From the IMG/VR virus record IMGVR_UViG_3300017991_000048, positions 124,001-188,000 of that record: a DNA stretch of 64,000 nt; one strand, written 5' to 3'. Numbering within the stretch: position 1 is the first letter of the stretch; every line of letters begins with the position of its first letter. The translations under genes and the position numbers were made by a program. Below the pieces are notes generated by a model. The model saw nothing but the letters and a program-made list of their open reading frames with translations. It ran no database searches and was not told the DNA's origin. This document shows, piece by piece, positions 14,083 to 62,747 of this stretch.

Positions 14083-14093
14083 TGGTGTAATAG
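14083..14093 (+). promoter_or_regulatory. putative phage promoter TGGTGTAATAG
   Basis: 5 nt before ATG 14099. Confidence 0.6.
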
Positions 14094-27990: not shown

Positions 27991-28001
27991 GTATTACACC
28001 G
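27991..28001 (-). promoter_or_regulatory. putative phage promoter CGGTGTAATAC
   Basis: 6 nt before ATG 27984. Confidence 0.65.
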
Positions 28002-32441: not shown

Positions 32442-32452
32442 ATATTACACCG
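32442..32452 (-). promoter_or_regulatory. putative phage promoter CGGTGTAATAT
   Basis: 9 nt before clpX ATG; embedded in inverted repeat ACACCG-N7-CGGTGT (32447-32465). Confidence 0.65.
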
Positions 32453-38358: not shown

Positions 38359-38367
38359 CTGAGTTCT

Positions 38368-46445: not shown

Positions 46446-46453
46446 ATCGGTGG

Positions 46454-46464
46454 ATCTTACACCG
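46454..46464 (-). promoter_or_regulatory. putative phage promoter CGGTGTAAGAT
   Basis: 8 nt before ATG 46445, at the head of the replication operon. Confidence 0.6.
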
Positions 46465-46478
46465 ACAATCGGATAAGT

Positions 46479-47519: not shown

Positions 47520-47523
47520 ATTA

Positions 47524-47964: not shown

Positions 47965-48115
47965 ATCTCTTACGTCTGTAATCTAGGTATTCACAGGTGC
48001 AGGCATAAGTGAATCCACACACCCAGAAAACGGCGAAACAAGTGAGTATTACCCACGCTGTTATATTAAGGATCTCTACCACTATGGCCTCAGAAAGCGA
48101 AGTAAACCGCCACAA
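47924..48115 (-). CDS. small single-TM protein
   Basis: Hydrophobic ITAWVILTCFAVFWVCGF; start uncertain. Confidence 0.35.
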   Translation of the reverse strand: MWRFTSLSEAIVVEILNITAWVILTCFAVFWVCGFTYACTCEYLDYRRKRFEDDRERGNACHN

Positions 48116-48743
48116 AGGGATTAGAGCGCCATGCGGTCCAGGTAAGGCTATACCCGGCGTACAGGCCGAAGTTGGTGGTCAGATCAGCAGCCAGACCAGC
48201 CCCTAAGGACCTGACTCCGACATAGGCATTCAGGTTTGCCCAATGGAAGTAGAACAACTCCATCAGAAGTCCACCATCTAATACTTCCTGGAACTCCTTG
48301 GCCTGGAAAGCATCGGCCACTAGAAAGCCAAATACAGCCTTTATCCTGAGTCGGAAACCGGCTTTTGGTTCCACACGTTGTGCTACTTGTAGTTCTATGT
48401 CGGATTTGGCTGTGATTTGGTAATTGCACCAATTTATCTGCAACTCATAAGGCTTCGGGCCAGACCCGGAACCGTAGACCCGCCCTTTTCGGTCAACCAT
48501 GATCTTGACGGAATCGGACGTGACTTTAGGAGCTTCATCCATCCGACATTTGTGTTGCTTCAAGAGCTTGAGGAACAAGTCCAAATCTTCAGTTTTTACA
48601 CAGGTGCCGCCTGGACAAGATGCCGGTCCTGTGGATGCCATAGGTGGTTCCACGGTCACTGTAGACTCTTCCACAGTTGGAACGGGCTTGGCATTCGCAG
48701 TGGTGGTCACGAAAAGCAATAGAAATGGCAAAAACAGACGCAT
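48090..48743 (-). CDS. exported protein with C-terminal beta-strands (outer-membrane-like); possible lysis accessory
   Basis: Signal peptide ..TTTANA; alternating hydrophobic strands ending VAVYFAF. Confidence 0.5.
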   Translation of the reverse strand: MRLFLPFLLLFVTTTANAKPVPTVEESTVTVEPPMASTGPASCPGGTCVKTEDLDLFLKLLKQHKCRMDEAPKVTSDSVKIMVDRKGRVYGSGSGPKPYELQINWCNYQITAKSDIELQVAQRVEPKAGFRLRIKAVFGFLVADAFQAKEFQEVLDGGLLMELFYFHWANLNAYVGVRSLGAGLAADLTTNFGLYAGYSLTWTAWRSNPFVAVYFAF

Positions 48744-48758
48744 TATGTTCCTTGAGTC

Positions 48759-49412
48759 TTACGGCATATCATTAAATTTTTGCTTGTACTCTTGCCTGAT
48801 CTCGTCAGTTATCTCATCAAACTCGCTATTAGTAGCCTTGGTCAGATTTCTAAGTAGATCTATTACCTTAGTCCCACGACTACAAACGTTAGACATATCT
48901 GACAGTATATCGTCCTCACCCTTTACAACCTGCTGTAAAGTATCCACATTGACAGACAACACTGCTAGACCATTGGAAAGCTCATGCACAATTAGACGAG
49001 TCAGTTCTTTACATATATCTACACGTTTTATCTGTTCCTGTTGGGCAAAAATCATCTTCTCAGCTTCGACCAAAGCCTTGTCGGAGGTAATATCTCTAGC
49101 CAAGATCAGTACTTTGCCATCACCCAGAGAACTGACAGTGCTTTGGTATATTCGCTTCTTTCCTTCCGCATCAACCCTGGAAGTTTCGTATTTGGTAATA
49201 GACCCGTTTTTGGCTTGTCGAATAGAGGTACTCATTATACCTCTATGCTCATCTTCCATCCAATCCATAGCGGATGTACCAATCACTTCTTCCCTGGTCG
49301 TATTTATTCCCTCTTCAAGAAGATTGATGTACTCAATCTTCCCGTCGTTGTCTGTTATTATTACCATCTCAGGGATGCTGTCTAAGACACGTTCCCAGTT
49401 TTCGTCAGACAT
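48759..49412 (-). CDS. PAS + HisKA-like protein lacking the HATPase domain
   Basis: VLDSIPEMVIITDNDGKIEYIN...EEVIG...RDITS.K..E (PAS), then LIVHELSNGLAVL (H-box), then stop. Confidence 0.75.
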   Translation of the reverse strand: MSDENWERVLDSIPEMVIITDNDGKIEYINLLEEGINTTREEVIGTSAMDWMEDEHRGIMSTSIRQAKNGSITKYETSRVDAEGKKRIYQSTVSSLGDGKVLILARDITSDKALVEAEKMIFAQQEQIKRVDICKELTRLIVHELSNGLAVLSVNVDTLQQVVKGEDDILSDMSNVCSRGTKVIDLLRNLTKATNSEFDEITDEIRQEYKQKFNDMP

Positions 49413-49420
49413 TATAAACC

Positions 49421-49993
49421 TTAATTATATTTGTTGAGCAAGGCGTCGATCTCTTCGGCTTCGATACCGGAAGTGTCTTTGACCGTAACGGCAAATTTCT
49501 TGGGCTTTACCACTATAACTTTGTCAACATCCTTGGCTTTTACACCGGTAGGTAGTTTGACCTTTACAGACTTATCTTCACCAGGAGGGGTGAACTCAAC
49601 CACGTCAGGATTCGAGAAAATGCCCGGTTTCTTAATCGGCACAACCACAGCCTGAGTGTTTCCCTCAGAATCAGCTTCACCCGGTTTGATAATCTTGCCA
49701 TCTTTGTCTACCCGGTCCTCAGGCACCGTATTGGCTGTATCTATTGCATTGTCGTCAGGGTCTTTTTTACCGAACAACCGCCCCAGGATTCCACCTACCT
49801 GTATGTTTTTGAACCCAAATATTATCAGAAGGACGGCTACCGCTACTACAATTAAAGCCACGCCAGGGGCCACAAAAACCTTAGCCAACCACTTGCCGAT
49901 ATCTATGGTTTTAGCCTTTACCGTCTGCCAGAACGTAGGTTTCTCCTCTGGCTTCGGTAGCGGAGGTGGCTCCGCTTTAGGTGTGTCGCACAT
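49421..49993 (-). CDS. single-TM membrane protein (spanin-like position)
   Basis: One long TM (GVALIVVAVAVLLIIFGF) followed by a soluble domain; follows the holin-like gene. Confidence 0.5.
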   Translation of the reverse strand: MCDTPKAEPPPLPKPEEKPTFWQTVKAKTIDIGKWLAKVFVAPGVALIVVAVAVLLIIFGFKNIQVGGILGRLFGKKDPDDNAIDTANTVPEDRVDKDGKIIKPGEADSEGNTQAVVVPIKKPGIFSNPDVVEFTPPGEDKSVKVKLPTGVKAKDVDKVIVVKPKKFAVTVKDTSGIEAEEIDALLNKYN

Positions 49994-50394
49994 TAGTCAT
50001 TACCGTTGGGCGTAAGATCCTTGGGATCAACACCAAGCTTCTTAGCAAAACCCATGCGTAACCCCTTGTAAAGCATGCCGCTGAACCAGCCGATAACGCT
50101 GCCAAAAAGACAACGAGCCGCTGTCGTTTTGAGGTCTTCCCCAAAAATGAACGGCATATCGATCAGCCCTGACAGCGCTCCAGTGACCACGGGGATAAGG
50201 TAAAGGATGAACTTGTTCCACCATCTGGCGAACGGAGTCTCATAGGTTGCATCCTTATGATTTTCGTCAGCTTTTTTCGCCAGAGAAGGTCTGGCTGTCT
50301 CTACGGCTCGACGGATAAACCATGTCACGATGTAACACGCCAGTGCCAGAATCACCGCACCGGTTGATATAAACTGTTGTACTATTTCATCCAT
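49993..50394 (-). CDS. putative holin
   Basis: 133 aa, three hydrophobic segments, charged C-terminus; follows the virion gene block. Confidence 0.5.
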   Translation of the reverse strand: MDEIVQQFISTGAVILALACYIVTWFIRRAVETARPSLAKKADENHKDATYETPFARWWNKFILYLIPVVTGALSGLIDMPFIFGEDLKTTAARCLFGSVIGWFSGMLYKGLRMGFAKKLGVDPKDLTPNGND

Positions 50395-50396
50395 CT

Positions 50397-50678
50397 TTAA
50401 CTCCCCTCGATTGTTGCTTTAGTCAGTTCTTTCACCTTTTCAATAAGCGCTGGATTCACCGCTTCTGAGACAGGCGGTAGCTTCCCGAAAGAAGGACGTT
50501 CAGCAGCCCCTCTTTCCCACAGGTCTATCTTTTTGAGTTGGTTGTGAAGCTGTTGAATCTGTTCAGGCGCAAGATCGGGGTTTGATAAAGACGCCTGAAT
50601 GCGATCCTTGACAGCTTTCGCGCCTTTCTTCCGTTGTTCCGGAGAAAGATCTAAATAACTCATGCGAATAACCGACAT
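50397..50678 (-). CDS. hypothetical protein
   Basis: 93-aa ORF in operon. Confidence 0.5.
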   Translation of the reverse strand: MSVIRMSYLDLSPEQRKKGAKAVKDRIQASLSNPDLAPEQIQQLHNQLKKIDLWERGAAERPSFGKLPPVSEAVNPALIEKVKELTKATIEGS

Positions 50679-50682
50679 AAAA

Positions 50683-53600
50683 CTAAACCTTTCTAGCTAA
50701 CTGGATCGTGGACGGATCGATAAGCATCTTGACATTATTACTTACCATCGGGTGTCCCTCGATACGGTACAGATCCGCTGCTGAGTATCCTTCACCATCA
50801 CCATTGGTTCCGATGAGAATGGTGGAAGGGTCATTCGCAACTGAAGGAGGTCGCGTTACATTTGTTATCACCAACAACATTAGCTCATCGCCAGCCGATA
50901 CCTCATTGGAACCGACATTCGTAACAGTGTTACGGACTAACATGGCTCTACCTTGTATTGCGTTTACATTGGTTGAAACCACGTTACTCATTGCGTTTTG
51001 CAATGAAACAGAGCCGCCAGGATGAGGCCCAGAAGCTGTAAACACAGAGCCGCCCCGGAGCACACGGAAGTTGGTTAGCAGCGAGTAGTTGCCCTGCTCC
51101 CCGTCCACATGAACCAGAACATCACCAGGATCTCCGATCCCTGAAGACGCTGTGCTCAGATTGACTTCATCTTGCTCTATTTGGCTATCAGCCGCCAATC
51201 CTGTCGAGCTACCGCTTCCCACAACATCCTCAAGTACCAGTGTTGCAGGCATCAAAGACGAGTGGATTTTACCGCGAAAATCTTTGTCACGCCAAAGCGC
51301 TCCCAAAGGTAGCCGTTCAGAACAGCCAAGATACTCCGTTCCGATGTTAAGAGCGTCACCAGAAACAAAGTTCTTGGGCAGCGACTTGGGCCTGTCAGCA
51401 ATTGCTGTGCTTGGCGGGTAGACCGTGGGGTCTTCATAAGCCACATTGGTGAAGGTGCCCAACTCTCCAGGCAGTGCAGCGTAGGAAGCATCCCCGGAAT
51501 ACCGTCCGGTGCCAAGGGTTGTGGAAAACCCTACAGACGCCAGTATTTCTAACACCTTCTCATTGGGCCGCGTGAGGGTATCATAATCCAAGTCTGTAGA
51601 ATCAATCTCATACGCTGTGCCTGACGTTAACGGCCCCGGCGCATAAGGTATGTCAATGTAACTCGTCTGACTGCCCCAAGCGTCTCCTTGGTACGGAGTC
51701 CGAGAGTAATTGATCAGGATCTGATCCGATTGCTCAGCAGGCCCCGGCAAAACACAAGTAGGCAACGGAACCACCTTATTAATGTTATCTTCGCGGTTCG
51801 GGTTGGTCTGAGGATCAGTGCCGTCTCCAACAAGATTCCAACCATTGAGATTTCCCGGACGGGTCATCACCAAACGAAATTCTGAGTCTAGGTCAAACGA
51901 GCCACGATCAAACCCAAAGATCACCGCTTCGACAACATATTCTCCCGACTGGAAATCAGCGATCGGCACGGGAGATTTTGTAATATCGATTGCATTCGCA
52001 TTAAGAATGAACGTCGAGTCTCCGTCGTCATCGATTTCAACCCATAAAGGTGGACCGTCCGACTGAGGCACTGATTGGCGAAGTAAATTTACAGCCGTAC
52101 CCGTGCCGCCCGTGTCACGTTGTAAAGTAAATGGGCTGTCATTGGTTGTGTAATCAGAGGCTTCATACACGCCGAAAATCCGAGCGACCCCATAAAACGG
52201 CGGGAACTCCAACCCCTCCCGATCATAACCTCGCGTGTCGGTAAAGAATCGAATACCACACCAATCGTTACCCCCGATGCCAGTCCCGATAGTATTATAT
52301 GGAATAGGCGTGGAAGCATTGTCCACCTGACTGAAGATAGAATACTCTCTTGTGCCGCCTGCATTTCCGTTAAAATAAGCAGCATATGTAAACTGTTCAG
52401 CCGTTGGCGTACCGGGAAGACTTCTGATCATAAAGTCGATGCCACTTGCAAACGTTGTAGTTCCAACGGTACGAATTGGAACCTGTACTTCTCCCCACCC
52501 CGGCATTAGATGACGAGGTAAGGACACATAAATGTTCTTCTGTGTCGCGATGCTGTGAGTTTCACCACAGAACAAGCCCAAAGGATCAGTAGTTGCCCAC
52601 TTTGGAGTTACGCCATCCGGTTCGAAGAGAGGCATAACTCCTTGCGCGTCGTGGACTGTATACGAAACAGCAACCCCTGCTTGAGCGCGGATAGGACGAT
52701 CCAACGTGTAAGCCGTTGGAGCCACAGATAGAATTGTATACCGACCGGCACCCGGCCCTGACGGAATAACTAAAGCGTCTCCCCCGGCAGCGGGGGCTGT
52801 CCCACTACCGTCATTCAGGATGGGATCATTGAGTCCGTTAGTAACTCCTGTAGCGCTGGTCTTTTTCGCAGTTGGGACAGGGTTCGCAGCGTCTCCATCA
52901 ACTGTTAACGGACCTGTGAAATCCAAACGGCGGAAAGGAGTGACTAAAACAGTCTTGCTTCCAAGGTCTGCGTACATCTCAGAAGTCACAGGAAGCAGGT
53001 TGTTGAATGTGGCCGAGCGGTACTTGCTCCATAAAGGAGCCCAGGCCACTCTTGCCCCTAAATTACTAGAAGGAGCACCCCACTGTTGGGTGAGTATGTC
53101 TGCTCCTGGATTAAGATATGAAATCGAATGCAGCGAATCAGGTCGGCGGGACAAGCCGCGTCCCGGACCATACACCGCGTGAACCTTAATATGCAAATAA
53201 GTTGGGGCGGCAGTTGTCGTGGTTTGTGTTGGAAAGTCTGGACCCAATGTAATGGTCAAATCATCATTTGGACCTGGAACTGCGGGGGTTACCGTGTACA
53301 TCGAAGGCGGCAAATCGCCTGTCTCACCGTCAAGCCGAAGAGACACAGACCCAGACAAACTGTCATATAGCCATCGTACCTGATCTGTTGCTCCAGCCTG
53401 AAACCCCGTCTTGAGCTGGTTTACGGGGATTACAATTATGTCACCGCTTTGAAAGGCGTTAGCCGCCTGTTGGTTTATCGTTTGAACTGTCAAACCAAGG
53501 GACCAATTTACGTCAATGTCAACACCGGGACCAGGAGGTACGATACCGGTACTTGGTTCAACCACGCACTCAATAGGCTGAAGAGTAGCCGCGTCTGAAA

Positions 53601-55038
53601 ACACCATACGAATGTTGTCCGGTGCATCTAACTGAGTGACGCCCAGAGACACCGCAGCCGACTGAATCGCATCTTGATAATGGACAAAAGAGCCTTGAGG
53701 ACCAGCACCAGTGCGCTTCCAGTTAGCTCTAAGCTGCCCACGCAGAAGCTTGTCGAGGTTGTTTCTAAGAAGCGCCGTATAATCCATACCGTTAGGATTA
53801 ACCAAATGCCTAAGGTCTAAGATATCCGTATTGGCAACCTGATCTGCATACAACCCATCTGGACGACCTGACACCACTGTAATCACGGACCCTGCCGTAT
53901 GTGCTTCCGCGAGAGTTCCGTTAGCACCACGAGTTATGCCACTTATAGTGGTTCCCGTGATTGAGGTATAGGTCATAATCTCGTCGTTGATCTTGATCGT
54001 AACCGCTGTTGCGGGTGTGGTGGGCAACGGTATATCGGTTGCCGACACAAGGGTTGCCGACGTGTCAGAATCCGTCATCGCGGCGTCTAACGTAGGAACT
54101 GTCGAAAAAGTGGCGACCCCTGTGCGATCGACCGCTGTAGGATTTCGGTCAAAACTGCCATTAAGATTCTGAGAAGGGGTGCCATTCCATACGACTGTAT
54201 TACGACGGAAAACAACACAGATAGGAACGGCGTAAGAATAACCATCCACAGTGCCCAGATCATTCTGACTACCATCACCGGCTCTCCATAGCCCTGGATC
54301 ACCAAGTGTCTCTCTCATGTTCTCAAAAACATAAGCGGTAGGAGCAGAAGCCGCACCCTGAGCCTTAACAACAACAGGATCAAACCCATCGGGATTTGTT
54401 GTCAACCCTACTAACCCTTTGACAACACGAATGCGATATTGAATCTGAACTCTTTGCTCAGTCTCAAACCCCAACGCCGGGTCAATAAGGTCGTCAGATA
54501 GGAAGCTGTAACCACCTTCGACATTCCCATACTTATAAATAGCGCTCGCAGATGGCTTATTAGTAGTAGACGGGTCAGGTTGAATCCGAGCTTTCCAAAC
54601 TTCCAGGAAAGCAAAGTCGATACGGAAATCCCCTGAATTCTCCGGAGGTGGGTCCAGAGCTATGACATTAGTCGTATCGGTATCATCAGGTGACCCCGGA
54701 GGTGTTCCCGTCCGAGTCCCTGTAACCGGAATAAGCCATCCATTGACGTTAGCCCACATGATGGACTTCTGCTCGCCGGTTCTTTGTGGGCCAAACTTAA
54801 ACCAATTTGACCAGATGGAACTTGTAAGAAAGTCGGCCTGCGGGTTGGTTTCATTACCCAAGAATCCTGAAGGCATGTCACGCAAAAGAGCCGCCTGTAC
54901 GGACCTACCCGCCAACTGTTGCATTAGATTCAATGCTGCGTCAGTCGGTGGCTTCCCTTCTTGCCAAATAGCGAGTTGGTACGCCGTTTCATCAGCCAAA
55001 AGAACTCTGGATACCCCGGAACCAAAATTGTCTGTCAT
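50683..55038 (-). CDS. large virion structural protein (tail/baseplate-associated)
   Basis: 1451 aa, G/T/P/D-rich beta-type composition; N-terminal WQEGKPP.DA.LN..Q and DFAFLEVW pattern, plus TIKINDEIMTY..RGANGT.A.AH.AG module seen in tail proteins. Confidence 0.65.
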   Translation of the reverse strand: MTDNFGSGVSRVLLADETAYQLAIWQEGKPPTDAALNLMQQLAGRSVQAALLRDMPSGFLGNETNPQADFLTSSIWSNWFKFGPQRTGEQKSIMWANVNGWLIPVTGTRTGTPPGSPDDTDTTNVIALDPPPENSGDFRIDFAFLEVWKARIQPDPSTTNKPSASAIYKYGNVEGGYSFLSDDLIDPALGFETEQRVQIQYRIRVVKGLVGLTTNPDGFDPVVVKAQGAASAPTAYVFENMRETLGDPGLWRAGDGSQNDLGTVDGYSYAVPICVVFRRNTVVWNGTPSQNLNGSFDRNPTAVDRTGVATFSTVPTLDAAMTDSDTSATLVSATDIPLPTTPATAVTIKINDEIMTYTSITGTTISGITRGANGTLAEAHTAGSVITVVSGRPDGLYADQVANTDILDLRHLVNPNGMDYTALLRNNLDKLLRGQLRANWKRTGAGPQGSFVHYQDAIQSAAVSLGVTQLDAPDNIRMVFSDAATLQPIECVVEPSTGIVPPGPGVDIDVNWSLGLTVQTINQQAANAFQSGDIIVIPVNQLKTGFQAGATDQVRWLYDSLSGSVSLRLDGETGDLPPSMYTVTPAVPGPNDDLTITLGPDFPTQTTTTAAPTYLHIKVHAVYGPGRGLSRRPDSLHSISYLNPGADILTQQWGAPSSNLGARVAWAPLWSKYRSATFNNLLPVTSEMYADLGSKTVLVTPFRRLDFTGPLTVDGDAANPVPTAKKTSATGVTNGLNDPILNDGSGTAPAAGGDALVIPSGPGAGRYTILSVAPTAYTLDRPIRAQAGVAVSYTVHDAQGVMPLFEPDGVTPKWATTDPLGLFCGETHSIATQKNIYVSLPRHLMPGWGEVQVPIRTVGTTTFASGIDFMIRSLPGTPTAEQFTYAAYFNGNAGGTREYSIFSQVDNASTPIPYNTIGTGIGGNDWCGIRFFTDTRGYDREGLEFPPFYGVARIFGVYEASDYTTNDSPFTLQRDTGGTGTAVNLLRQSVPQSDGPPLWVEIDDDGDSTFILNANAIDITKSPVPIADFQSGEYVVEAVIFGFDRGSFDLDSEFRLVMTRPGNLNGWNLVGDGTDPQTNPNREDNINKVVPLPTCVLPGPAEQSDQILINYSRTPYQGDAWGSQTSYIDIPYAPGPLTSGTAYEIDSTDLDYDTLTRPNEKVLEILASVGFSTTLGTGRYSGDASYAALPGELGTFTNVAYEDPTVYPPSTAIADRPKSLPKNFVSGDALNIGTEYLGCSERLPLGALWRDKDFRGKIHSSLMPATLVLEDVVGSGSSTGLAADSQIEQDEVNLSTASSGIGDPGDVLVHVDGEQGNYSLLTNFRVLRGGSVFTASGPHPGGSVSLQNAMSNVVSTNVNAIQGRAMLVRNTVTNVGSNEVSAGDELMLLVITNVTRPPSVANDPSTILIGTNGDGEGYSAADLYRIEGHPMVSNNVKMLIDPSTIQLARKV

Positions 55039-55185
55039 ATCTTTTACCTTCTGATTTAATCCTGACGAAAGCCTGTCGAAAGGGTTAAATTATAGGGACT
55101 TTCGCAATAGGGGTTGTGCTCCTGGTACACCAACCTCAAAAGTGTTATTTAAAAAGGGGGAAATTCTAGAGTTTTTACCCCTCTC

Positions 55186-55196
55186 AAGTGTAATAT
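55186..55196 (+). promoter_or_regulatory. putative phage promoter AAGTGTAATAT
   Basis: 4 nt before ATG 55201, no SD. Confidence 0.55.
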
Positions 55197-55200
55197 CTTC

Positions 55201-57540
55201 ATGGAAAGATTTTTTCTCGTTTTTACCCTAATCGTGGCGACAGCCTGCGGGACTAGCGCCACCCCTCCCTCTGGGTCAAAATCTGGCGATCCGACGTCTG
55301 TTACAAGCGGTGAAACCGACGATGCTGAAAAGCCAGACGACACCTCTACTCAAGATGCTGGAGTGTTGGATAGTGCTTCTGAGGTATTGGACAGTGGCTC
55401 TGAGCCCTTAGATTCCAGTGTTGATGCTAGTATAGAAGACTCAGGCACTGGTGCTTCAGACACTGGTATAGGAGACTCAGGCACTGATAGCGGGGCAATT
55501 GACGCTGGCTCCGATACGGCTACAGACACTTCTGTCCCAGATTGCACCACAGGAACTAAGTGCGTCGATCTTAAGGTCTTTGCCTGTGTTAGCGGCTCCT
55601 GGGTAGAGCAGAGCACCTGTCCCTACGTGTGTGACAACGGAGCTTGCACTGGGGTCTGCACCCCCTCTGACAAGCGGTGCAACGATAAGAATTTAGAGGT
55701 TTGCGATCTAAACGGGCAATGGGAAATCTCCACTACATGCCCCTACATTTGTTCAGGTACTGCCTGTGCTGGAAGTTGTGTTCCAGACGACAAAGACTGC
55801 TCAGGAACTACGTCCCGGACCTGTAACAACTCTGGCGAATGGGTCAATGGTTCGGCCTGTCCTTATGTATGTTCAGACGGAGACTGTACAGGTGTGTGTG
55901 TCCCAACTACTCGTCAATGCGATGGATTAAAATCTCAGACCTGTAGTGCTCAGGGGCAATGGGAAACAGACCAAACCTGTCCTTACGTTTGCTCAGGTAA
56001 TGGAAACTGTACAGGCGAGTGTGTTCCTACCACTAAACAGTGTGATGGCTCTACGCCTCAAGTATGTGACGGTGACGGCTTTTGGGCTTCTGGATCAGCT
56101 TGTGGCTATGTATGCTCACAGGGGGATTGTACGGGGGTCTGTGTCCCAGAAACTGATCGATGCGAGGGCAAGAAGTCTCAGACTTGTAACGCTCAAGGTC
56201 AATGGGCGACAAATCAAACCTGTCCCTATGTCTGCACAGGGGCCGGGAACTGTACCGGTGAGTGTGTCCCTGAGAGTGAGGACTGTCAGGGAGATACCCC
56301 ACGGTCTTGTAATGCTCAAGGTCAATGGATAAGCGGCTCAGAGTGCCCGTTTGTGTGCTTAGATGGCGATTGTACCGGTGTCTGTGAGCCTGAAGATACC
56401 CAGTGCTCTGACGAACAAATTCAGGACTGCAACGCTCTAGGCCAATGGAACACGCCTGTTGATTGTGAGGCTGTTGACGGAGCCGAGTCCTACTGTGAAA
56501 CAGGTGAATGCACCTATGCTTGTAAGCTAGATTTTGATGATTGTGACAGCAATCCTAACAACGGTTGCGAAGCCGATCTAAATGCCGATCCTGATAACTG
56601 TGGCTATTGTGGGCATTGGTGTTGTGGCGGAGCTTGCGGGGATGGAACATGCGAAGTTTACACTTCAGGTATCTACCCTTCGTTAGGTCCGTGGCCCCAG
56701 ATAGACAGTTACGATGTAAGTCAAACGGACATCTACTGGACTACTGGCACTGATCTCAAAAAACAGTCTCGCTCAGGTGGGGGAACCACAACGCTTGTTT
56801 CCGGAGAAACCAACCTCCGGGCTGTAACAGTTTATGAGTCGGAAGTGTTTTGGACTTCCGATAGCCCTTCTACTCGTATATATTCTCTCACCACTCCGGA
56901 AGGCATCAGCACCTTTACCAGCATCGCCAATCAACTCGTCGTGACTTCTACCGATATTTTTTATGCTGTTGGCAACCGAAGTGTTATAAATTACGTCCTA
57001 CGTTCTAATAATCACGTTGATAGCGTAATGAGTGGCGGTTTAACCAACGCATACGCAGAGCCAATCGTAACAGATGGCACTTATGTATATGCCGCCCGTC
57101 AGATGTACTCTTCAAACCAAACCCCTATTGTAAGAGCCCCAATCCATGGTGATACGGAAGCGGTCTTTGTCGATTACTCACCAACAATACCAACCGCAGC
57201 ATACAGTTTCAGGCATCTGGCAATAGACGACGCTAACTTATATTATGTCTTCTATATAGGCGCTGAGCCTGCTTCAAACGGTATTTACAAAAAGCCGCTT
57301 GCAGGCGGGGATGCAGTGCAACTTCTATCTAGCTCTACCTCGTATGCGCTTGCTACCGATGGTCTGAACATCTACTACGCCAACTCTCCTCCTGGTCCCG
57401 ACTCAATTCAGAAAATCAGTGTAGATGGAGGATCAGCGACAACCTTACACACGGGCGACAACTTCCGAGATATAAAAGTTGTAGACCAATGTGTGTACTT
57501 TTATGGCAATGGAGTCCAAGCCATTGCAGTGGAGCCCTAG
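55201..57540 (+). CDS. myxobacterial-type Cys-rich repeat lipoprotein with C-terminal beta-propeller (DUF5050-like)
   Basis: Lipobox VATAC; DAG/DSG linker; 7+ Cys repeats; NGCEADLNADPDNCGYCG module; blades LAIDDANLYY, LATDGLNIYYAN, IVTDGTYVY. Confidence 0.8.
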   Translation: MERFFLVFTLIVATACGTSATPPSGSKSGDPTSVTSGETDDAEKPDDTSTQDAGVLDSASEVLDSGSEPLDSSVDASIEDSGTGASDTGIGDSGTDSGAIDAGSDTATDTSVPDCTTGTKCVDLKVFACVSGSWVEQSTCPYVCDNGACTGVCTPSDKRCNDKNLEVCDLNGQWEISTTCPYICSGTACAGSCVPDDKDCSGTTSRTCNNSGEWVNGSACPYVCSDGDCTGVCVPTTRQCDGLKSQTCSAQGQWETDQTCPYVCSGNGNCTGECVPTTKQCDGSTPQVCDGDGFWASGSACGYVCSQGDCTGVCVPETDRCEGKKSQTCNAQGQWATNQTCPYVCTGAGNCTGECVPESEDCQGDTPRSCNAQGQWISGSECPFVCLDGDCTGVCEPEDTQCSDEQIQDCNALGQWNTPVDCEAVDGAESYCETGECTYACKLDFDDCDSNPNNGCEADLNADPDNCGYCGHWCCGGACGDGTCEVYTSGIYPSLGPWPQIDSYDVSQTDIYWTTGTDLKKQSRSGGGTTTLVSGETNLRAVTVYESEVFWTSDSPSTRIYSLTTPEGISTFTSIANQLVVTSTDIFYAVGNRSVINYVLRSNNHVDSVMSGGLTNAYAEPIVTDGTYVYAARQMYSSNQTPIVRAPIHGDTEAVFVDYSPTIPTAAYSFRHLAIDDANLYYVFYIGAEPASNGIYKKPLAGGDAVQLLSSSTSYALATDGLNIYYANSPPGPDSIQKISVDGGSATTLHTGDNFRDIKVVDQCVYFYGNGVQAIAVEP
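55543..56466 (+). repeat. tandem ~40-aa six-Cys repeats (7 full + 1 partial)
   Basis: C.P....C.G.....C...G.W.....CPYVC..G.C.G.; units alternate (GDCTGV / GNCTGE), giving a higher-order ~81-aa repeat. Confidence 0.85.
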
Positions 57541-57541
57541 A

Positions 57542-57775
57542 ATGCCTGGAACACCATCTATTGCGTCCCGACGAGTAATCTTGCTCATCGACGACAATAA
57601 GGACACCGAAAGAGCCAGAAGCCTGCTCAAAAACCGGCGTATCAAGTTTTCTGAAGTAAGTGACGCCACTATCCGTGGGCCAAAACCACCTTATCCGCGC
57701 CCATCACTGATAGCTGGCGGAGTGGTCTACAAAGGCTTGAACGAAATCAGATTTGGCGTCAACTTTGTTCTATAG
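57542..57775 (+). CDS. small glutaredoxin-like protein lacking CxxC
   Basis: GGAG SD; VILL......ERARSLLKNRRIKFSEV...PSLIAGGVVYKGLNEI. Confidence 0.4.
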   Translation: MPGTPSIASRRVILLIDDNKDTERARSLLKNRRIKFSEVSDATIRGPKPPYPRPSLIAGGVVYKGLNEIRFGVNFVL

Positions 57776-58024
57776 TGATTTAATTATCCATACAGCCAAC
57801 GCTATAAGAACCGGGATAGCCCCACCCATCAGACCCCAGACGTGAGATTTAACCTTTAGAACACCGATCTCGACCTTAATGTCCGTCTGGTCACTTTGGA
57901 TCTTCTCTACCGTCTGATTTATTCTCTTAATCTCCTTGAGCACGTGAATAGTGTACTCGCTAACGTCTCTCTGAGAGCTAGGAGTGCGCGGAGGTGTGAG
58001 GCTATCATCATCATAGATTCCCAT
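57770..58024 (-). CDS. small coiled-coil + C-terminal TM protein (holin/XhlA-like)
   Basis: Heptad helix followed by WGLMGGAIPVLIALAVWII. Confidence 0.5.
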   Translation of the reverse strand: MGIYDDDSLTPPRTPSSQRDVSEYTIHVLKEIKRINQTVEKIQSDQTDIKVEIGVLKVKSHVWGLMGGAIPVLIALAVWIIKSL

Positions 58025-58315: not shown

Positions 58316-59167
58316 CTAAGCTCTTTCCTCCAAATAAACGCTAAGAGCCTCTTCCCAAGGAATTAAACGGTCCAACCCTATCGTTTTCAAACCCTTATTT
58401 TCCAAAACCGAGTAAGAAGGCCGAGTAGCCTTGGCTCCAGACTCCGCTGTTGTTTGTGGGCTCACGTCAGGTTCGAGCCCTTTTTGCCTGAAGATTTCCA
58501 GGGCAAACTCGTACCAGGAGCACTGACCCTGACATGTAGCATGGTAAAGCCCGTAACTCTCTGTCCGAATCAGAACTCCTATTTGCTGTGCCAAGCCTTT
58601 AGTTGAGGTAGGCGTTAAAACCTGATCGTCAACCACTTTTATAGGCTTTCCTGATTCAGCCAATCTTAACATTGTTTCAACAAAGTTACCCCCTTTGCCA
58701 GATGAGCCTGCTAACCCGTACAGCCCACTGGTCCTGACAATGAAATGCCTGTGCCACGAAAGCTGAATGTCAAGTTCCCCTGCTACCTTGCTAGACCCAT
58801 ATACATTCACTGGGTCTACTTCATCCGCCTCTATGTATGGTTCGCCTTTCTTCCCTGAGAAGACATAATCTGTGCTCAGATGTACCAGAGCGGCGTTCAA
58901 GTTGTTGCATACTCTCGCAAGATTAGAAGCTCCATCAGCATTCACTTTAGTGGCCAAATCAGGATGCTCTTCGGCTTCATCAACTCGGTGGTATGCCGCT
59001 GTGTTTATTACGACTTCTGGCTCTAGAGGCTCTAATACGGTCTTAACGGACTCATATTGACTCACCTCTATGTCTCTGTGAGTGAGCTTGGAAACCGTGT
59101 CCTCGTTCAATGTCAGAATGAGGTCGTGAGCCAGTTGCCCGTTTGCCCCAATCAAAGCAATCCGCAC
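58316..59167 (-). CDS. rmlD: dTDP-4-dehydrorhamnose reductase
   Basis: GANGQL, INTAAY, STDYVF.G, YGSSK..GE, GNFV.TM, VV.DQ..TPT, SWYEFA, RP.YSVL. Confidence 0.95.
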   Translation of the reverse strand: MRIALIGANGQLAHDLILTLNEDTVSKLTHRDIEVSQYESVKTVLEPLEPEVVINTAAYHRVDEAEEHPDLATKVNADGASNLARVCNNLNAALVHLSTDYVFSGKKGEPYIEADEVDPVNVYGSSKVAGELDIQLSWHRHFIVRTSGLYGLAGSSGKGGNFVETMLRLAESGKPIKVVDDQVLTPTSTKGLAQQIGVLIRTESYGLYHATCQGQCSWYEFALEIFRQKGLEPDVSPQTTAESGAKATRPSYSVLENKGLKTIGLDRLIPWEEALSVYLEERA

Positions 59168-59168
59168 G

Positions 59169-60206
59169 TCAAAAAACCGATCCAGTCACCTTGATAACGC
59201 CACTAGCCTCTTCCAAAAGCCTCATCCAATTAATATTATAGTATCGAGGGTTCTCAAAATCCATATAATTATATTCTTTGATCTTCTCGACTATAGTCAC
59301 AACGGATTCCTCGATCGTAACCTTTGGTTTGATGCCCAAAACTTTTTCCATCTTGGTGGTTTCAACTCTGTAACTCCGTACTCCTTTGTAGGAGTATACC
59401 GGTTCGATATCTACCTGTATGTTCAACTGAGACAGTGCCTCTTTCGTTCTAAGAGCCAGTTCAGATATACGCATGTTTTCAGATGAGATATTAAAGATCT
59501 CACCCCTAACTTTTTCAGCCGGTGCTTCGATGCTGGCTATATAGGCTCTGGCTACATCTCGTACACTAATCAAGGGACGCCACATTTCCCCGCCATAATG
59601 TAAAACCAACTTGCCCTTTGTCAGAGCATCTTTGACAAAGGTGTTGACTACCAAGTCGTAACGCATCCTGGGCGAGAAACCAAATATAGTACCTTTACGT
59701 AAAAGCACAGGACAGAAATCTCCATCCACCATCTCAAGCAAGAGCTTTTCGGCTTCCAGTTTGGAACTTGAGTAAGCTGAACGAGAAACTACGTCAGCCT
59801 CTTCATCCTGAAGCATGTCTTGTTCATCATCCCCAACTCCTTTGTCGTAGATCGAACAAGTGGACGCAAGGACGTACCTCTGCACCCCGGCTTCTTTACA
59901 CAGTCGTGCCAATGTTACCGTGGCGTCCGTGTTCATCTCGTGGTTGGCTTTTGGATTGAACTCAGCAGTCGGATCGTTTGAAAGACCGCCAATATTTATA
60001 ACAGCGCTTACCCCCTCAAAAGCTTCAGGGCCGACTGAACGCATATCTTCAACGATGAGTTCAACTCTGTCCCGAAATTCGCGTAAACCGTAATCCCCAA
60101 AGTAAAGCCTGTCCACAATCTTTACAGAGTAGCCTCGCTCCAATAGCTCTTCTGTCAAGACGGACCCAACATACCCCGCTCCGCCAACAAGTAGGACTTT
60201 CTTCAC
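59169..60206 (-). CDS. NAD-dependent sugar epimerase/dehydratase (extended SDR)
   Basis: GGAGYVGS, LSNDP, ASTCSIY, YSSSK, SPRMRYDLVVN, WRP. Confidence 0.92.
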   Translation of the reverse strand: MKKVLLVGGAGYVGSVLTEELLERGYSVKIVDRLYFGDYGLREFRDRVELIVEDMRSVGPEAFEGVSAVINIGGLSNDPTAEFNPKANHEMNTDATVTLARLCKEAGVQRYVLASTCSIYDKGVGDDEQDMLQDEEADVVSRSAYSSSKLEAEKLLLEMVDGDFCPVLLRKGTIFGFSPRMRYDLVVNTFVKDALTKGKLVLHYGGEMWRPLISVRDVARAYIASIEAPAEKVRGEIFNISSENMRISELALRTKEALSQLNIQVDIEPVYSYKGVRSYRVETTKMEKVLGIKPKVTIEESVVTIVEKIKEYNYMDFENPRYYNINWMRLLEEASGVIKVTGSVF

Positions 60207-60668
60207 TTACTTGCCTTTCACCGTCCAAAGGCCGCCATAAAAGTTCGGCGGAATCCGAACTTCGTCGGGCTGCTCAGGATTGTAACAATGGCTGGCTACG
60301 CTGATCATCTGAGTATCGTCCTCAAGAGACATCCAGCCGTGGTATACACCGGGGGGTACAACAACCAGCCGGGGCCTTCTGGAACTGGCAATGATTGTCA
60401 TCTTTTCGTCCTTGGTAGGCCCTTCACGATCATCGACAAGCACAAATTTGGCGGTGCCGTGGCTGATAAAGAACCAGTCCCAAAGCTCTTCATGTTTATG
60501 AAACGCCCGAATGGTCCCGCGTACAGGGTCGCCTACCAAATAAACTTGGCCGAACTTATGAACCACACCATGCGGCATGGAGTCTTCGGCATGACGGACG
60601 ATTTCAATGAGATAACCTCTGTCGTCCTCGTGGCAAGTTAGATCTATTATTTTCACATCTGTAATCAT
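60207..60668 (-). CDS. rmlC: dTDP-4-dehydrorhamnose 3,5-epimerase-like (cupin)
   Basis: HEDDRG.L.E, GTIRAFHKH, LVDDRE, VPPGVYHG, YNPEQPDE.R. Confidence 0.85.
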   Translation of the reverse strand: MITDVKIIDLTCHEDDRGYLIEIVRHAEDSMPHGVVHKFGQVYLVGDPVRGTIRAFHKHEELWDWFFISHGTAKFVLVDDREGPTKDEKMTIIASSRRPRLVVVPPGVYHGWMSLEDDTQMISVASHCYNPEQPDEVRIPPNFYGGLWTVKGK

Positions 60669-61355
60669 CTATATATCCTCATTAGGTAAATCAAACTCTG
60701 CGAAGAGAGATGCGACATACACATTCTCAACAGAATAATTATCAGTAATTTGAACTTCCAAGCGATAAGGGTGGGGGAACATATGTGAAAAGAATGTGTC
60801 TGAGAAAATGTTTCCTACCGACTTGGCCGGTACGTGATCTTCGGCTGTTAGTACAACCTCATTACCGTCCTCACCTACCAACAAACAGTCCACGGTATGA
60901 TCAACCGGATCGTTGTTAAACAGAACAAAACTAGCGCCACAAGGGTAGAAACTTGTTACCGGGACTTGCCACATCTTTCCTGGAGGCGGCGCGGCTACCA
61001 CGGTTCGTCCGGGACCAATACGAACTCTTGGGCTGACACAAGACTTGTCTACGTGAATCTTATCTGGGGTAAAAACCAGATCGTCTTTTTCTGTTTGTAA
61101 TATGATTTTTTCATTTGCCACAAGACCGAACGTAGCGGAAGCTGGATTAGGGGACGGCACATTCGCAGATTCATCTTTCCCCAAAACCCCATCAGCTAAT
61201 GCCAATTCATTGCCGTGAGTATCGATATACAAGATCTTATATTCAACCGGATCACTGCCTTTGTTGTGTATAGCCCCGACATTGACCGCCTCGCCTACAT
61301 TACAGACAATCCTGATCTCATCCTCAGCCCCTTCAACGAGCACACGGTTTACCAT
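60669..61355 (-). CDS. hypothetical beta-rich protein
   Basis: 228-aa ORF within the sugar cluster; two similar halves (HNKGSDPV / NNDPVDH). Confidence 0.55.
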   Translation of the reverse strand: MVNRVLVEGAEDEIRIVCNVGEAVNVGAIHNKGSDPVEYKILYIDTHGNELALADGVLGKDESANVPSPNPASATFGLVANEKIILQTEKDDLVFTPDKIHVDKSCVSPRVRIGPGRTVVAAPPPGKMWQVPVTSFYPCGASFVLFNNDPVDHTVDCLLVGEDGNEVVLTAEDHVPAKSVGNIFSDTFFSHMFPHPYRLEVQITDNYSVENVYVASLFAEFDLPNEDI

Positions 61356-61993
61356 TTAACTAGATCCTCAAACTGTAAAAACGCTGGTTTTTTTGGATAC
61401 CCTTCTTTGGTGGCGTCTTCAACTAACATGGGAAGCCCTGGAGAAACGAGGCCAGTAGAAGCCACATTTGTTCTTGGGTACGGAATGCGTTTCCCTAAAA
61501 ACTTAGCCAAGTCCTCCATCTTGGTAGTTGATTCCAACGGAAGAACAAGAAGTTGTTTCGTTCCAGCAAAATAATCTCGTACTCCTTCTTCATGTTCTAA
61601 AAAGACACGCTTGAAATGAGCCTCATGGTATCCCTCGATATTACAAGGACACCCGAAGATTTTGGATGAACGCCAATCGAGAAGCTTTTGTAATCTCGGT
61701 GGCCAGACGGTCTTCATGTGCTTCTGTATTGACACTAACCACTTGTCCACATTCCGTGTGGTCAGTATGAATTTACTGTCAGGGTACGTCTTATCACACA
61801 ACTCGTATTCGACCTCATTCATATTACTGATTGAATCCCAAGGTCTGGCGTCCCAGTAAACATCTCCGGTTTCCTGAAGATGTTCCGCATATTTCAACGG
61901 GAAGTGTATATCGACCAGCCCCATCATTCGTACAGCAAACGAGTAAGAAGTTGTTCCGGTTTTGAAATGGCCTATGGCAAAAATCTTAGACAT
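61349..61993 (-). CDS. sulfotransferase family protein
   Basis: KIFAIGHFKTGTTS (PAPS loop), YPDSKFILTTR..KW..S, H...V.DYF. Confidence 0.85.
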   Translation of the reverse strand: MSKIFAIGHFKTGTTSYSFAVRMMGLVDIHFPLKYAEHLQETGDVYWDARPWDSISNMNEVEYELCDKTYPDSKFILTTRNVDKWLVSIQKHMKTVWPPRLQKLLDWRSSKIFGCPCNIEGYHEAHFKRVFLEHEEGVRDYFAGTKQLLVLPLESTTKMEDLAKFLGKRIPYPRTNVASTGLVSPGLPMLVEDATKEGYPKKPAFLQFEDLVKW

Positions 61994-62747
61994 CGAAATA
62001 AGTTTCTATAAGTTTGTCCACAGCATTTTCCTTAATCACATCTTTCGGAATGTGACGTCCTGGCCATGTTTTCTCAAGCTCGATCAAATCTTCGTATAGA
62101 GGGAAGTAATCTACACCATTATTTTCCTCGGCCAATTCCTTACACGCTGTTACCAATATAGCTTTCGATTCGGGTGTGGTTGCAGTGTTCACTGGAGCAA
62201 GAGGGGATACCATCAATATGAACGATGTATCGGCTTTCACTGATCGGAGGGTGTTTATTGAATCTTGTATATAACTTTTGCATTCTGGCACCGATAACAT
62301 TTTCGCTGTGGTATTGGCTTTCTTAAACCCTCTAGCTGGCACTTGCCAAAAACAATCATCAGCGTCTTGCCAAACTTCTGCCATACCGAAAATGAATATT
62401 ATGTTTTGAGCATCAAACATATGCCGCAAAACATTATTGTAAAGCCATCGCCTACGGTCAAAGAAATGCTCTTTTGTGAACGGCATGAGGCCAGCTAATT
62501 GTATATCAATATACTGCCCCAAGTAGCTGCGGCAAAACTTTTCATAATCTTCATCGTGAACGACTCCGCCTCGATGATAAATTTTCGTCGCTATCTCTAT
62601 TTCACAGTAAATACCGGGCGGAGAATATTTATTGAAGTCGCCTGGGGTTTTCACTACTTTGAGAACCCCATCTAAATGGTTTTCCATCTGTCTTGCTATA
62701 CAACTCCCGAACAAAAATAGCTTTGTGTCTTGAAAATCAGTAGCCAT
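61986..62747 (-). CDS. GSCFA-domain protein
   Basis: FGSCIA, IFIFGMAEVW, ILMVSP, SKAIL, YFP.YE, RH. Confidence 0.8.
   Translation of the reverse strand: MATDFQDTKLFLFGSCIARQMENHLDGVLKVVKTPGDFNKYSPPGIYCEIEIATKIYHRGGVVHDEDYEKFCRSYLGQYIDIQLAGLMPFTKEHFFDRRRWLYNNVLRHMFDAQNIIFIFGMAEVWQDADDCFWQVPARGFKKANTTAKMLSVPECKSYIQDSINTLRSVKADTSFILMVSPLAPVNTATTPESKAILVTACKELAEENNGVDYFPLYEDLIELEKTWPGRHIPKDVIKENAVDKLIETYFDV

What the first reader, a model, noticed from the sequence alone, without database searches (positions are those of the whole stretch)
55186..57540. Phage-borne myxobacterial-style Cys-repeat surface lipoprotein on its own promoter
Seen: lipobox, DAG/DSG linker, seven-plus six-Cys repeats in an alternating dimer pattern, an NGCE.DL..DP.NCG.CG module and a beta-propeller. 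It lies antisense to the structural block and has a GTGTA motif 4 nt upstream. Known: this architecture is typical of Myxococcota (Polyangium/Sorangium-type) surface proteins, and the myxobacterial kin-recognition receptor TraA also uses a Cys-rich stalk with a distal recognition domain. Inference: the host is a myxobacterium, and the phage displays a captured adhesin on infected cells (superinfection exclusion, or manipulating cell contact/outer-membrane exchange to spread).
Basis: partly seen in the sequence, partly recalled or inferred. Interest (0 to 1): 0.62.

Follow-up and report, generated by a model that had tools for sequence, protein, structure and literature searches.

The report
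Huge-phage stalked cysteine-rich envelope lipoprotein
A 398-kb phage carries, under its own promoter-like motif, a long disulfide-rich lipoprotein of a family otherwise found almost only in myxobacteria; it is most likely exported to the infected cell's envelope rather than built into the virus particle, which points to (but does not prove) a myxobacterial host.

Summary
The ORF is real (window 55201-57540, +, 779 aa).
- a lipobox;
- a 98-aa D/S/G/T-rich linker;
- eight six-Cys repeats of alternating type;
- an NGCE...CGxCG module;
- a six-bladed YWTD/DUF5050-type beta-propeller (AF2 pLDDT 92).

The window lies in a complete 398-kb phage record with terminal repeats. The gene is not a recent capture. 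Orthologues (38-50% identity, lipobox Cys invariant) sit on other large phage contigs (147-433 kb). They usually lie beside a conserved 1451-aa protein with a tail-fibre-like domain, and most of them cluster apart from the cellular relatives in a tree.

Cellular relatives are almost all Myxococcota: 79 loci among 185,579 species, and 63/301 Myxococcota against 0/301 Chloroflexota. It is not a TraA relative. The flanking block is replication and sugar genes, not structural genes. GTGTAAT is a recurrent promoter-like motif of this phage.

A myxobacterial host is plausible but unproven: phage GC is 48% against 57-74%, there was no CRISPR hit, and the neighbouring RmlD gene gives no support.

The function is inferred: an exported envelope lipoprotein that alters the infected cell's surface. 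Superinfection exclusion is the leading guess.

The parts
55166..55196 (+). Promoter-like element: CTAGAGTTT (55166-55174), a 13-nt spacer, then GTGTAATAT (55188-55196). It ends 4 nt before the ATG, and no Shine-Dalgarno sequence lies in between.
   Evidence: GTGTA is the second most enriched 5-mer upstream of 487 ORF starts (48 genes, 6.4x), with peak spacing 9-10 nt. 37 of 121 GTGTA[AG]T sites lie within 45 nt upstream of a start, with a -35-like TAGAGTTT/TTGA box. The window has 12 GTGTARTA sites against 2.0 expected, reached by 0 of 100 shuffles. Orthologues in L085, L002 and L004 keep the same layout.
55201..55248 (+). Lipoprotein signal peptide, residues 1-16, ending in the lipobox V-A-T-A-C16.
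   Evidence: Read directly. Cys16 is invariant in 16 full-length homologues. Nearly all 120 family members start with a lipobox signal peptide.
55249..55542 (+). Low-complexity acidic D/S/G/T-rich tether, residues 17-114.
   Evidence: Composition. It is variable and gapped among homologues. Cellular relatives have shorter linkers.
55543..56520 (+). Stalk: eight six-Cys repeats, residues 115-440, of alternating 40- and 41-aa types.
   Evidence: The AF2 model has pLDDT 93.6 and pTM 0.55, with all-beta modules. No convincing PDB counterpart. Homologues carry roughly 4 to 10 repeats (24-60 stalk Cys), most often 7 or 8.
56521..56652 (+). NGCE...DP.NCG.CGH.CCGG.C cysteine module, residues 441-484.
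   Evidence: Its columns are invariant in A1 and A2. It supplied the pattern that found the Myxococcota loci, and it is often tandem in cellular proteins.
56653..57540 (+). Six-bladed YWTD/DUF5050-type beta-propeller head, residues 485-779, plus the stop codon.
   Evidence: Pfam PF16472, the AF2 model, Foldseek against PDB, atlas and viral libraries.
50683..55038 (-). Divergent neighbour: a conserved 1451-aa protein (P0124) with a tail-fibre-like domain. Its gene is linked to the lipoprotein gene in related phages.
   Evidence: PHROG tail and tail-fibre hits at residues 305-391. It is 63-78% identical in 5 related loci. It matches Tunturi_5 gp247 'tail fiber protein', phage G gp420 and LR745208.1.
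58316..62747 (-). Downstream sugar-modification block: RmlD-like, epimerase/dehydratase, RmlC-like, sulfotransferase and GSCFA genes. This is context only and is not shown to act with the lipoprotein.
   Evidence: Pfam hits. A comparable sugar and methyltransferase block follows the orthologue in L002.

Best explanation
The gene encodes a phage lipoprotein that is made in the infected cell, not a virion part.

Shown or read directly:
- a type II (lipobox) signal peptide;
- a roughly 100-aa disordered acidic tether;
- a rod of eight beta modules, each with six Cys;
- a small Cys knot;
- a six-bladed beta-propeller at the far end;
- a phage-specific promoter-like motif directly in front of the start codon.

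Inferred:
- The host Sec/Lgt/LspA machinery exports and lipidates the protein.
- The 58 post-lipobox cysteines are oxidised in the periplasm.
- The protein is anchored in the envelope. The +2 residue is Gly or Ser, so probably the outer membrane, but whether it faces the surface or the periplasm is unknown.
- The propeller binds an envelope or surface ligand.

The gene came long ago from the Myxococcota family of stalked lipoproteins. It is now a conserved, fast-evolving gene of a lineage of huge phages (contigs of 147-433 kb here), usually next to a conserved gene for a protein with a tail-fibre-like domain.

Most likely role: it changes the surface of the infected cell so that further phage cannot adsorb or inject, or so that progeny are not trapped on debris. 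That would make it a giant functional analogue of T5 Llp or Cor.

Sub-confidences: exported lipoprotein and not a virion protein 0.85; Myxococcota origin of the gene 0.85; Myxococcota host 0.55; superinfection exclusion or receptor masking as the function 0.35.
For: - Phage record: 398,071 bp, terminal repeats, CheckV 100%; 42 tRNAs; replication genes.
- The lipobox Cys is invariant in 16 homologues, and lipoboxes run through the whole family.
- Head and stalk models are confident.
- Orthologues lie on phage contigs of 147, 208, 283, 323, 411 and 433 kb, with the 1451-aa gene adjacent in 7 of 8 loci.
- The lipoprotein is 38-48% identical among these loci, against 63-78% for its neighbour.
- The gene region has the phage's GC: 48.5% against 48.4% for the genome.
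- In the tree, a 27-row clade (SH-aLRT 99) holds 6 of 7 proteins from known huge-phage contigs, and all 31 Myxococcota-genome proteins lie on the other side.
- Taxonomy of cellular relatives.
- Promoter motif.
- Precedent: the T5 Llp lipoprotein gene lies adjacent to the receptor-binding protein gene pb5 and blocks the receptor FhuA (PMC9586334). In Tunturi_5 a 'lipoprotein precursor' gene also sits among tail-fibre genes.
Against: - There are no expression data.
- The host and the ligand are unknown.
- The 1451-aa neighbour is highly conserved, unlike a typical receptor-binding protein. It is called tail-fibre-like only from an 80-aa domain and from one annotated relative.
- Known exclusion lipoproteins are about ten times smaller and share no sequence with this protein (no PHROG hit).
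- Beta-propellers also occur in phage virion proteins.
- Phage GC is far below that of the Myxococcota genomes carrying relatives.
- No CRISPR-like match in 401 Myxococcota genomes for a 20-kb piece.
- The named best hits of the neighbouring RmlD gene are Chloroflexota, Planctomycetes and Acidobacteriota.
Confidence: 0.45

Rival explanations
1. Social manipulation. The phage displays a host-type stalked receptor to change cell-cell adhesion, kin recognition or outer-membrane exchange, and so helps its own spread through a myxobacterial swarm.
For: - The family is Myxococcota-specific.
- Cellular members carry swappable binding heads (FGE/lectin-like, RCC1, LamG, discoidin, fibrinogen-C, NHL) on the same stalk. 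This suggests a polymorphic surface-receptor family.
- TraA uses the same logic of a Cys-rich stalk with a distal head (PMC3325183).
- The head is the less conserved part of the protein.
Against: - There is no homology to TraA parts.
- No cellular member of the family has a known function.
- The host is unproven.
- Surface exposure is unproven.
Confidence: 0.15
2. A periplasmic role. The lipoprotein stays inside the envelope and its rod spans the periplasm. It might block DNA entry of a second phage, hold the envelope together until lysis, or bind peptidoglycan or an outer-membrane protein from inside, as T5 Llp does.
For: - T5 Llp was long thought to be external but is periplasmic (PMC9586334).
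- BamB, a periplasm-facing lipoprotein propeller, is among the fold matches.
- No surface-export signal can be read from the sequence.
Against: - The heads of cellular relatives are lectin- or adhesin-like, which suggests an outside location.
- A long acidic tether plus a long stalk is more typical of displayed proteins.
Confidence: 0.2
3. A virion fibre or receptor-binding protein.
For: - The gene lies next to a gene for a protein with a tail-fibre-like domain.
- Propeller folds occur in phage structural proteins.
Against: - The lipobox signal peptide is invariant.
- 58 cysteines in a regular disulfide-type pattern need an oxidising compartment, whereas tailed-phage virions assemble in the cytoplasm.
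- No PHROG structural family matches.
- All relatives are cellular lipoproteins.
- The gene is on the opposite strand and has its own promoter-like motif.
Confidence: 0.05
4. An artefact: host DNA mis-assembled into the phage contig, or a very recent passenger gene with no phage function.
For: The family is otherwise cellular.
Against: - The region has the phage's GC (48.5%), not 57-74%.
- The phage's own promoter-like motif precedes the gene.
- The same gene in the same neighbourhood is found on at least 8 independent phage contigs from different samples.
- Most phage copies cluster apart from the cellular ones in the tree.
Confidence: 0.02

Closest known systems
Myxococcota stalked Cys-repeat lipoproteins (unnamed family). 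Examples: the L007 ORF on a 3.3-Mb contig, the Minicystis rosea 1130-aa ORF, and MBI5535744.1, annotated 'SUMF1/EgtB/PvdO family' (Deltaproteobacteria MAG).
   Same: They share the lipobox, the six-Cys 40-aa repeat (37-48% identity), the CGxCGH module, and in many cases the same YWTD-type propeller.
   Different: - The phage copies have a longer tether (about 100 aa against 10-40) and more repeats than the L007-type protein (7-8 against 4).
- Head identity to cellular copies is low (23-28%).
- Most phage copies cluster apart from the cellular ones in the tree.
- The phage copies have phage-like GC and a phage promoter-like motif.
T5 Llp and the Cor lipoproteins (phage superinfection exclusion).
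   Same: They are phage-encoded lipoproteins made in the infected cell, and their gene lies beside a tail or receptor-binding protein gene (PMC9586334).
   Different: Llp and Cor are small single-domain proteins and are unrelated in sequence (no PHROG hit). For the present protein, the target and any exclusion activity are unknown.
TraA, the myxobacterial kin-recognition receptor.
   Same: It has a Cys-rich stalk that presents a distal binding domain on a myxobacterial envelope (PMC3325183).
   Different: TraA has a type I signal peptide, an N-terminal PA14 head, TIGR04201 repeats and a C-terminal MYXO-CTERM anchor. None of these is present here, and the polarity is reversed.
LDL-receptor/LRP6 YWTD propellers; Pfam DUF5050; BamB.
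   Same: They share the six-bladed propeller fold. Foldseek E is 1e-9 to 1e-8 against PDB, with TM up to about 0.5-0.57 for single-propeller entries and BamB; atlas TM is 0.6-0.7. Pfam DUF5050 is above its cut-off.
   Different: Sequence identity is 10-18%. The similarity is of fold only and says nothing about the ligand.

Membership tests
Bacterial lipoprotein (Lgt/LspA substrate) | N-terminal signal peptide with a basic n-region, a hydrophobic core and a lipobox ending in Cys within about 35 residues | tested here: met
   M-E-R, then a hydrophobic run, then V-A-T-A-C16. The Cys is invariant in 16 homologues.
Bacterial lipoprotein (Lgt/LspA substrate) | Actual acylation and signal peptidase II cleavage | not testable with these tools
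   This needs labelling or a globomycin assay. The phage encodes no LspA or DsbA of its own.
Myxococcota six-Cys-stalk lipoprotein family | Tandem 40-aa six-Cys repeats | tested here: met
   Eight repeats, 37-48% identical to cellular stalks.
Myxococcota six-Cys-stalk lipoprotein family | NGCE...CGxCGHxC module followed by a propeller | tested here: met
   An HMM of residues 441-779 matches its full length in about 30 Myxococcota ORFs. L007 was read directly.
Pfam DUF5050 (PF16472) | Score above the gathering threshold | tested here: met
   32 bits against a cut-off of 27. The match is partial, covering residues 682-768. The fold is confirmed.
TraA kin-recognition receptor | PA14-like variable domain | tested here: not met
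   The Pfam scan returns only DUF5050.
TraA kin-recognition receptor | TIGR04201 Cys-rich repeat | tested here: not met
   No NCBIfam hit. A search of the phage's own genome with TIGR04201 gives no match in this gene.
TraA kin-recognition receptor | MYXO-CTERM sorting tag (TIGR03901) | tested here: not met
   No NCBIfam hit. The protein ends ...AIAVEP, with no hydrophobic or Arg-rich tail.
Phage superinfection-exclusion lipoproteins (Llp/Cor) | Sequence relationship to Llp or Cor families | tested here: not met
   No PHROG family matches at E<=0.001.
Phage superinfection-exclusion lipoproteins (Llp/Cor) | Gene adjacent to the receptor-binding or tail-fibre gene | tested here: inconclusive
   The neighbour has a tail-fibre-like domain and matches a protein annotated as a tail fibre. 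Its role in the virion is not shown.
Phage superinfection-exclusion lipoproteins (Llp/Cor) | Blocks adsorption or injection of the cognate phage | not testable with these tools
   This needs the host and the phage in culture.
Virion tail fibre / receptor-binding protein | Cytoplasmic assembly into virions and relationship to structural families | tested here: not met
   Signal peptide with lipobox, a disulfide-type Cys pattern, and no structural PHROG.

The most novel reading that the evidence does not exclude
A lineage of huge phages (contigs of 147-433 kb here) infects Myxococcota and has domesticated one member of the host's polymorphic stalked-receptor family. It displays a taller copy on infected cells to rewire cell-cell contact (adhesion, kin recognition or outer-membrane exchange) as well as, or instead of, excluding other phages. 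This would be the first phage-encoded social-surface receptor, and the gene would serve as a host marker for a whole huge-phage clade.
Probability: 0.15. Interest if true: 0.8.

Novelty: new variant of a known kind. Interest (0 to 1): 0.55.

Why it matters
Phage-encoded envelope lipoproteins are known as small exclusion factors. This one is ten times larger and modular, belongs to a cell-surface family otherwise found almost only in one bacterial phylum, and is conserved across a lineage of huge phages.

If the host inference holds, it assigns uncultured huge phages to Myxococcota, for which few phages are known. It would also offer a handle on a large, uncharacterised family of myxobacterial surface lipoproteins. 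The recurrent GTGTAAT promoter-like motif, placed so close to start codons that the leaders must be very short or absent, is a testable feature of the phage's gene expression.

Tried and rejected
- No match in the INPHARED phage collection by tblastn, in PHROGs, or in NCBIfam.
- PDB by sequence gave only chance-level hits.
- The stalk model has no meaningful PDB fold match, TM <= 0.17.
- The head-only word search found only 5 proteins and added no taxonomy.
- CRISPR-type search: window 38000-57900 against 401 Myxococcota genomes gave only 26-40-nt matches at E about 1e-3, plus one conserved DnaB stretch. This is treated as chance. Only 5% of the phage was tested.
- The RmlD neighbour was used as a host marker. 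Its named best hits (58-62% identity) are Chloroflexota, Planctomycetes and Acidobacteriota, so it gives no support.
- tmRNA tag of a related phage fragment, L086: ANDNAFAAPVLAAA. Four Myxococcota genomes have ANDNA[IL]ALAA, and Chloroflexota tags differ. This is a weak hint only, and it is not from the window's phage.
- Terminase_6N, DsbA and LspA Pfam families were not found in the phage.
- The small + strand ORF 57491-57775 after the gene has no Pfam hit and no similarity to the ORF at the same place in L085, so it is not counted as part of the unit.
- The strict sigma-70 and terminator scan found nothing at the gene's ends.
- The Python box was lost. A planned repeat-identity matrix and linker statistics were replaced by alignments.
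Full report
WHAT IS THERE

The window is bases 124001-188000 of a 398,071-bp IMG/VR virus record with direct terminal repeats and a CheckV completeness of 100%. The record has 48.4% GC and 42 tRNA genes.

The ORF at 55201-57540 (+) encodes 779 aa. Reading it directly gives these parts:
- a signal peptide ending in the lipobox V-A-T-A-C16;
- a 98-aa D/S/G/T-rich linker with repeated D[AS]G;
- eight six-Cys units (residues 115-440) with fixed spacing and alternating 40/41-aa types;
- a cysteine module NGCE...DP.NCG.CGH.CCGG.C (residues 441-484);
- a C-terminal domain with YW/FW/YY blade motifs.

Pfam reports DUF5050 above its cut-off. AlphaFold2 with 40 homologues gives a confident head model (pLDDT 92.1, pTM 0.91), a six-bladed propeller. 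Its best solved matches are LDLR/LRP6/LRP2 YWTD propellers and BamB, and its best predicted matches are DUF5050, PD40 and NHL propellers. The stalk model is also confident locally (pLDDT 93.6). Its low pTM (0.55) suggests a chain of small all-beta modules whose relative orientation is uncertain, and it has no real solved counterpart. TRF finds no DNA-level repeat, so the repeats are old.

CONTEXT

- Upstream on the minus strand lie DNA polymerase, a DnaB-like helicase, another helicase, AAA ATPases and a DHH phosphoesterase.
- Downstream lie RmlD-like, epimerase, RmlC-like, sulfotransferase and GSCFA genes.
- The immediate divergent neighbour (50683-55038) is a 1451-aa protein, P0124. It has a roughly 80-aa domain shared with PHROG tail and tail-fibre families. 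By tblastn it matches a 485-kb uncultured phage (LR745208.1), Bacillus phage G gp420, and gp247 'tail fiber protein' of the 309-kb Tunturiibacter phage Tunturi_5. The Tunturi_5 neighbourhood also holds tail-fibre, virion-structural and 'lipoprotein precursor' genes.

PROMOTER

GTGTA is not a chance word here.
- Among 487 crudely called ORFs of the phage it is the second most enriched 5-mer in the 20 nt before start codons: 48 genes and 6.4-fold enrichment, against 12-fold for AGGAG.
- Its spacing to the start codon peaks at 9-10 nt.
- 37 of the 121 GTGTA[AG]T sites in the genome lie within 45 nt upstream of a start, and a TAGAGTTT/TTGA-like box sits 13-14 nt further upstream.
- In the window, GTGTARTA occurs 12 times against 2.0 expected, a count reached by 0 of 100 shuffles.
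- In front of this gene the element reads CTAGAGTTT (55166-55174), 13 nt, GTGTAATAT (55188-55196), 4 nt, ATG. There is no Shine-Dalgarno sequence.
- The orthologues in L085, L002 and L004 keep the same layout.

The spacing implies a very short leader or none at all. This is inferred; no transcript ends were available.

RELATIVES

The word-based protein search found full-length homologues (38-50% identity, 100% coverage) on very large contigs. It also found many cellular proteins that share only the stalk, fused to other heads such as FGE-sulfatase, RCC1, LamG, discoidin, fibrinogen-C and NHL.

Contexts show that the full-length ones are phage genes. The contigs measure 147, 283, 411 and 433 kb, plus IMG/VR contigs of 37, 208 and 323 kb. 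The P0124 homologue lies adjacent or within a few kb in 7 of 8 loci. One further group (L086) sits inside a phage-type array of 22 tRNAs and a tmRNA.

Across these loci P0124 is 63-78% identical, whereas the lipoprotein is 38-48% identical. The lipoprotein therefore evolves much faster than its neighbour. The lipobox Cys is invariant in all 16 aligned full-length homologues. Almost every family member, phage or cellular, begins with a lipobox signal peptide.

TAXONOMY OF THE CELLULAR FAMILY

- A degenerate-pattern scan of one genome from each of 185,579 species, using the CGxCGHxC motif, gave 79 confirmed loci. Nearly all are Polyangiaceae, Polyangia, Labilithrix, Sandaracinus, Kofleriaceae, Minicystis rosea or 'delta proteobacterium' MAGs, and one is a Chloroflexia MAG.
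- About 30 of the ORFs in these loci match the whole head profile.
- One, on a 3.3-Mb contig, reads lipobox, short linker, four six-Cys repeats, CGxCGH module and YWTD propeller.
- With residues 115-779 as the query, 63 of 301 evenly sampled Myxococcota species match at E<=1e-5, against 0 of 301 Chloroflexota. Minicystis rosea alone has 15 matches.
- Atlas look-alikes also point to Myxococcota, though only as leads.

TREE

This is a tree of 72 head domains (IQ-TREE quick search).
- A clade with SH-aLRT 99 contains the window's protein and 5 of the 6 other proteins known to lie on huge-phage contigs.
- All 31 Myxococcota-genome proteins lie on the other side of the midpoint root.
- One protein from a 433-kb contig, P0072, sits with P0049 on a long branch on the cellular side. 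This may be a second capture or an artefact.
- The root is not established, so the direction of transfer is inferred rather than shown. The inference rests on breadth: many paralogues and many head types in Myxococcota, against one architecture in one phage lineage.
- The gene region has phage-like GC, 48.5%. This argues for long residence in the phage.

HOST

The case for Myxococcota rests on the origin of this gene.
- Against it, or neutral: the phage clade has 44-58% GC, while the Myxococcota loci have 57-74%. A 20-kb piece gave no CRISPR-like hit in 401 Myxococcota genomes. The RmlD neighbour's named best hits come from other phyla.
- Mitigating: a 2026 preprint links phages of 45.9-50.7% GC to Myxococcota by CRISPR spacers. 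It also notes envelope-sugar genes in myxophages (bioRxiv 10.64898/2026.09.14.751636).
- A weak hint: the tmRNA of the related phage fragment L086 has a tag beginning ANDNA, as in four Myxococcota genomes and unlike four Chloroflexota tags.

I put the Myxococcota host at about 0.55.

MECHANISM

Shown: the domain layout, the conserved lipobox, the phage setting, the synteny, and the promoter-like motif.

Inferred:
- The protein is exported, lipidated and disulfide-bonded by host machinery. The phage encodes no DsbA or LspA of its own.
- It is anchored in the envelope with the propeller held at a distance.
- It binds an envelope or surface ligand.

A virion role is unlikely. Tailed-phage particles assemble in the cytoplasm, whereas 58 regularly spaced cysteines and a lipobox imply an oxidising, extracytoplasmic location.

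The best-supported functional guess is superinfection exclusion or receptor masking, by analogy with T5 Llp, whose gene lies next to the receptor-binding protein gene (PMC9586334). The fast evolution next to a conserved gene for a protein with a tail-fibre-like domain fits this guess.

Neither can be excluded.

COMPARISON WITH KNOWN FAMILIES

- It is a member of the unnamed Myxococcota stalked six-Cys lipoprotein family and of Pfam DUF5050.
- It is not a TraA relative: it has no PA14 domain, no TIGR04201 repeat and no MYXO-CTERM tag, and it is anchored at the opposite end (PMC3325183).
- It is not related in sequence to Llp or Cor.

LIMITS

- The Python box was lost. Gene calls behind the motif statistics were crude (longest ORFs).
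- Taxon labels are those of the record titles.

Noticed in passing
whole phage genome (G000); in the window e.g. 5952-5959(-), 6017-6024(+), 14085-14092(+), 27992-27999(-), 32443-32450(-), 55188-55195(+): There is a class of about 37 promoter-like sites. Each has a TAGAGTTT/TTGA-like box, a 13-14 nt spacer, then (c)gGTGTA[AG]T, placed so that start codons follow 9-10 nt after GTGTA. This implies very short or absent 5' leaders. AGGAG Shine-Dalgarno sites are used by other genes.
   Followed up: partly
window 50683-55038 (-): This 1451-aa protein is highly conserved (63-78% identity) in related huge phages. It has a roughly 80-aa tail-fibre-type domain, distant matches to Bacillus phage G gp420 and Tunturi_5 gp247, and a weak atlas lead to DUF4815 viral proteins.
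   Followed up: partly
L086 1-14343 (NCBI GCA_020050275.1, 167-kb contig): This contig is binned in a MAG but looks like a huge-phage fragment. It has 22 tRNA genes and a tmRNA (tag ANDNAFAAPVLAAA) within 14 kb, together with response-regulator and histidine-kinase genes and a family member of the lipoprotein.
   Followed up: partly
L085 4893-5753 (NCBI GCA_902725915.1, 283-kb contig): A LAGLIDADG homing-endonuclease gene is inserted between the 1443-aa gene and the lipoprotein gene. This is exactly where the two genes abut in the window.
   Followed up: no
window 58316-62747 (-): The phage carries a sugar-modification cluster: RmlD-like, epimerase/dehydratase, RmlC-like, sulfotransferase and GSCFA genes. 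A different sugar and methyltransferase/radical-SAM set occupies the same place in L002.
   Followed up: partly
window 48759-49412 (-): The phage encodes a PAS-domain protein (Pfam PAS_4, E 1e-10). Related phage loci also carry signalling domains.
   Followed up: no
G000:C1:92617-92693: ARAGORN reports a tRNA with a four-base anticodon (tccg) between two tRNA-Ile genes. L086 also has one, with anticodon aaga.
   Followed up: no
L002, L004, L085 (near the lipoprotein orthologues): An AdoMet decarboxylase-family gene (PF02675) recurs within a few kb of the lipoprotein gene in related phages.
   Followed up: no
L005 / protein P0072 (433-kb contig): The copy in this huge phage does not group with the other phage copies. 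It sits on a long branch among the cellular sequences, which may reflect an independent capture or rapid divergence.
   Followed up: no
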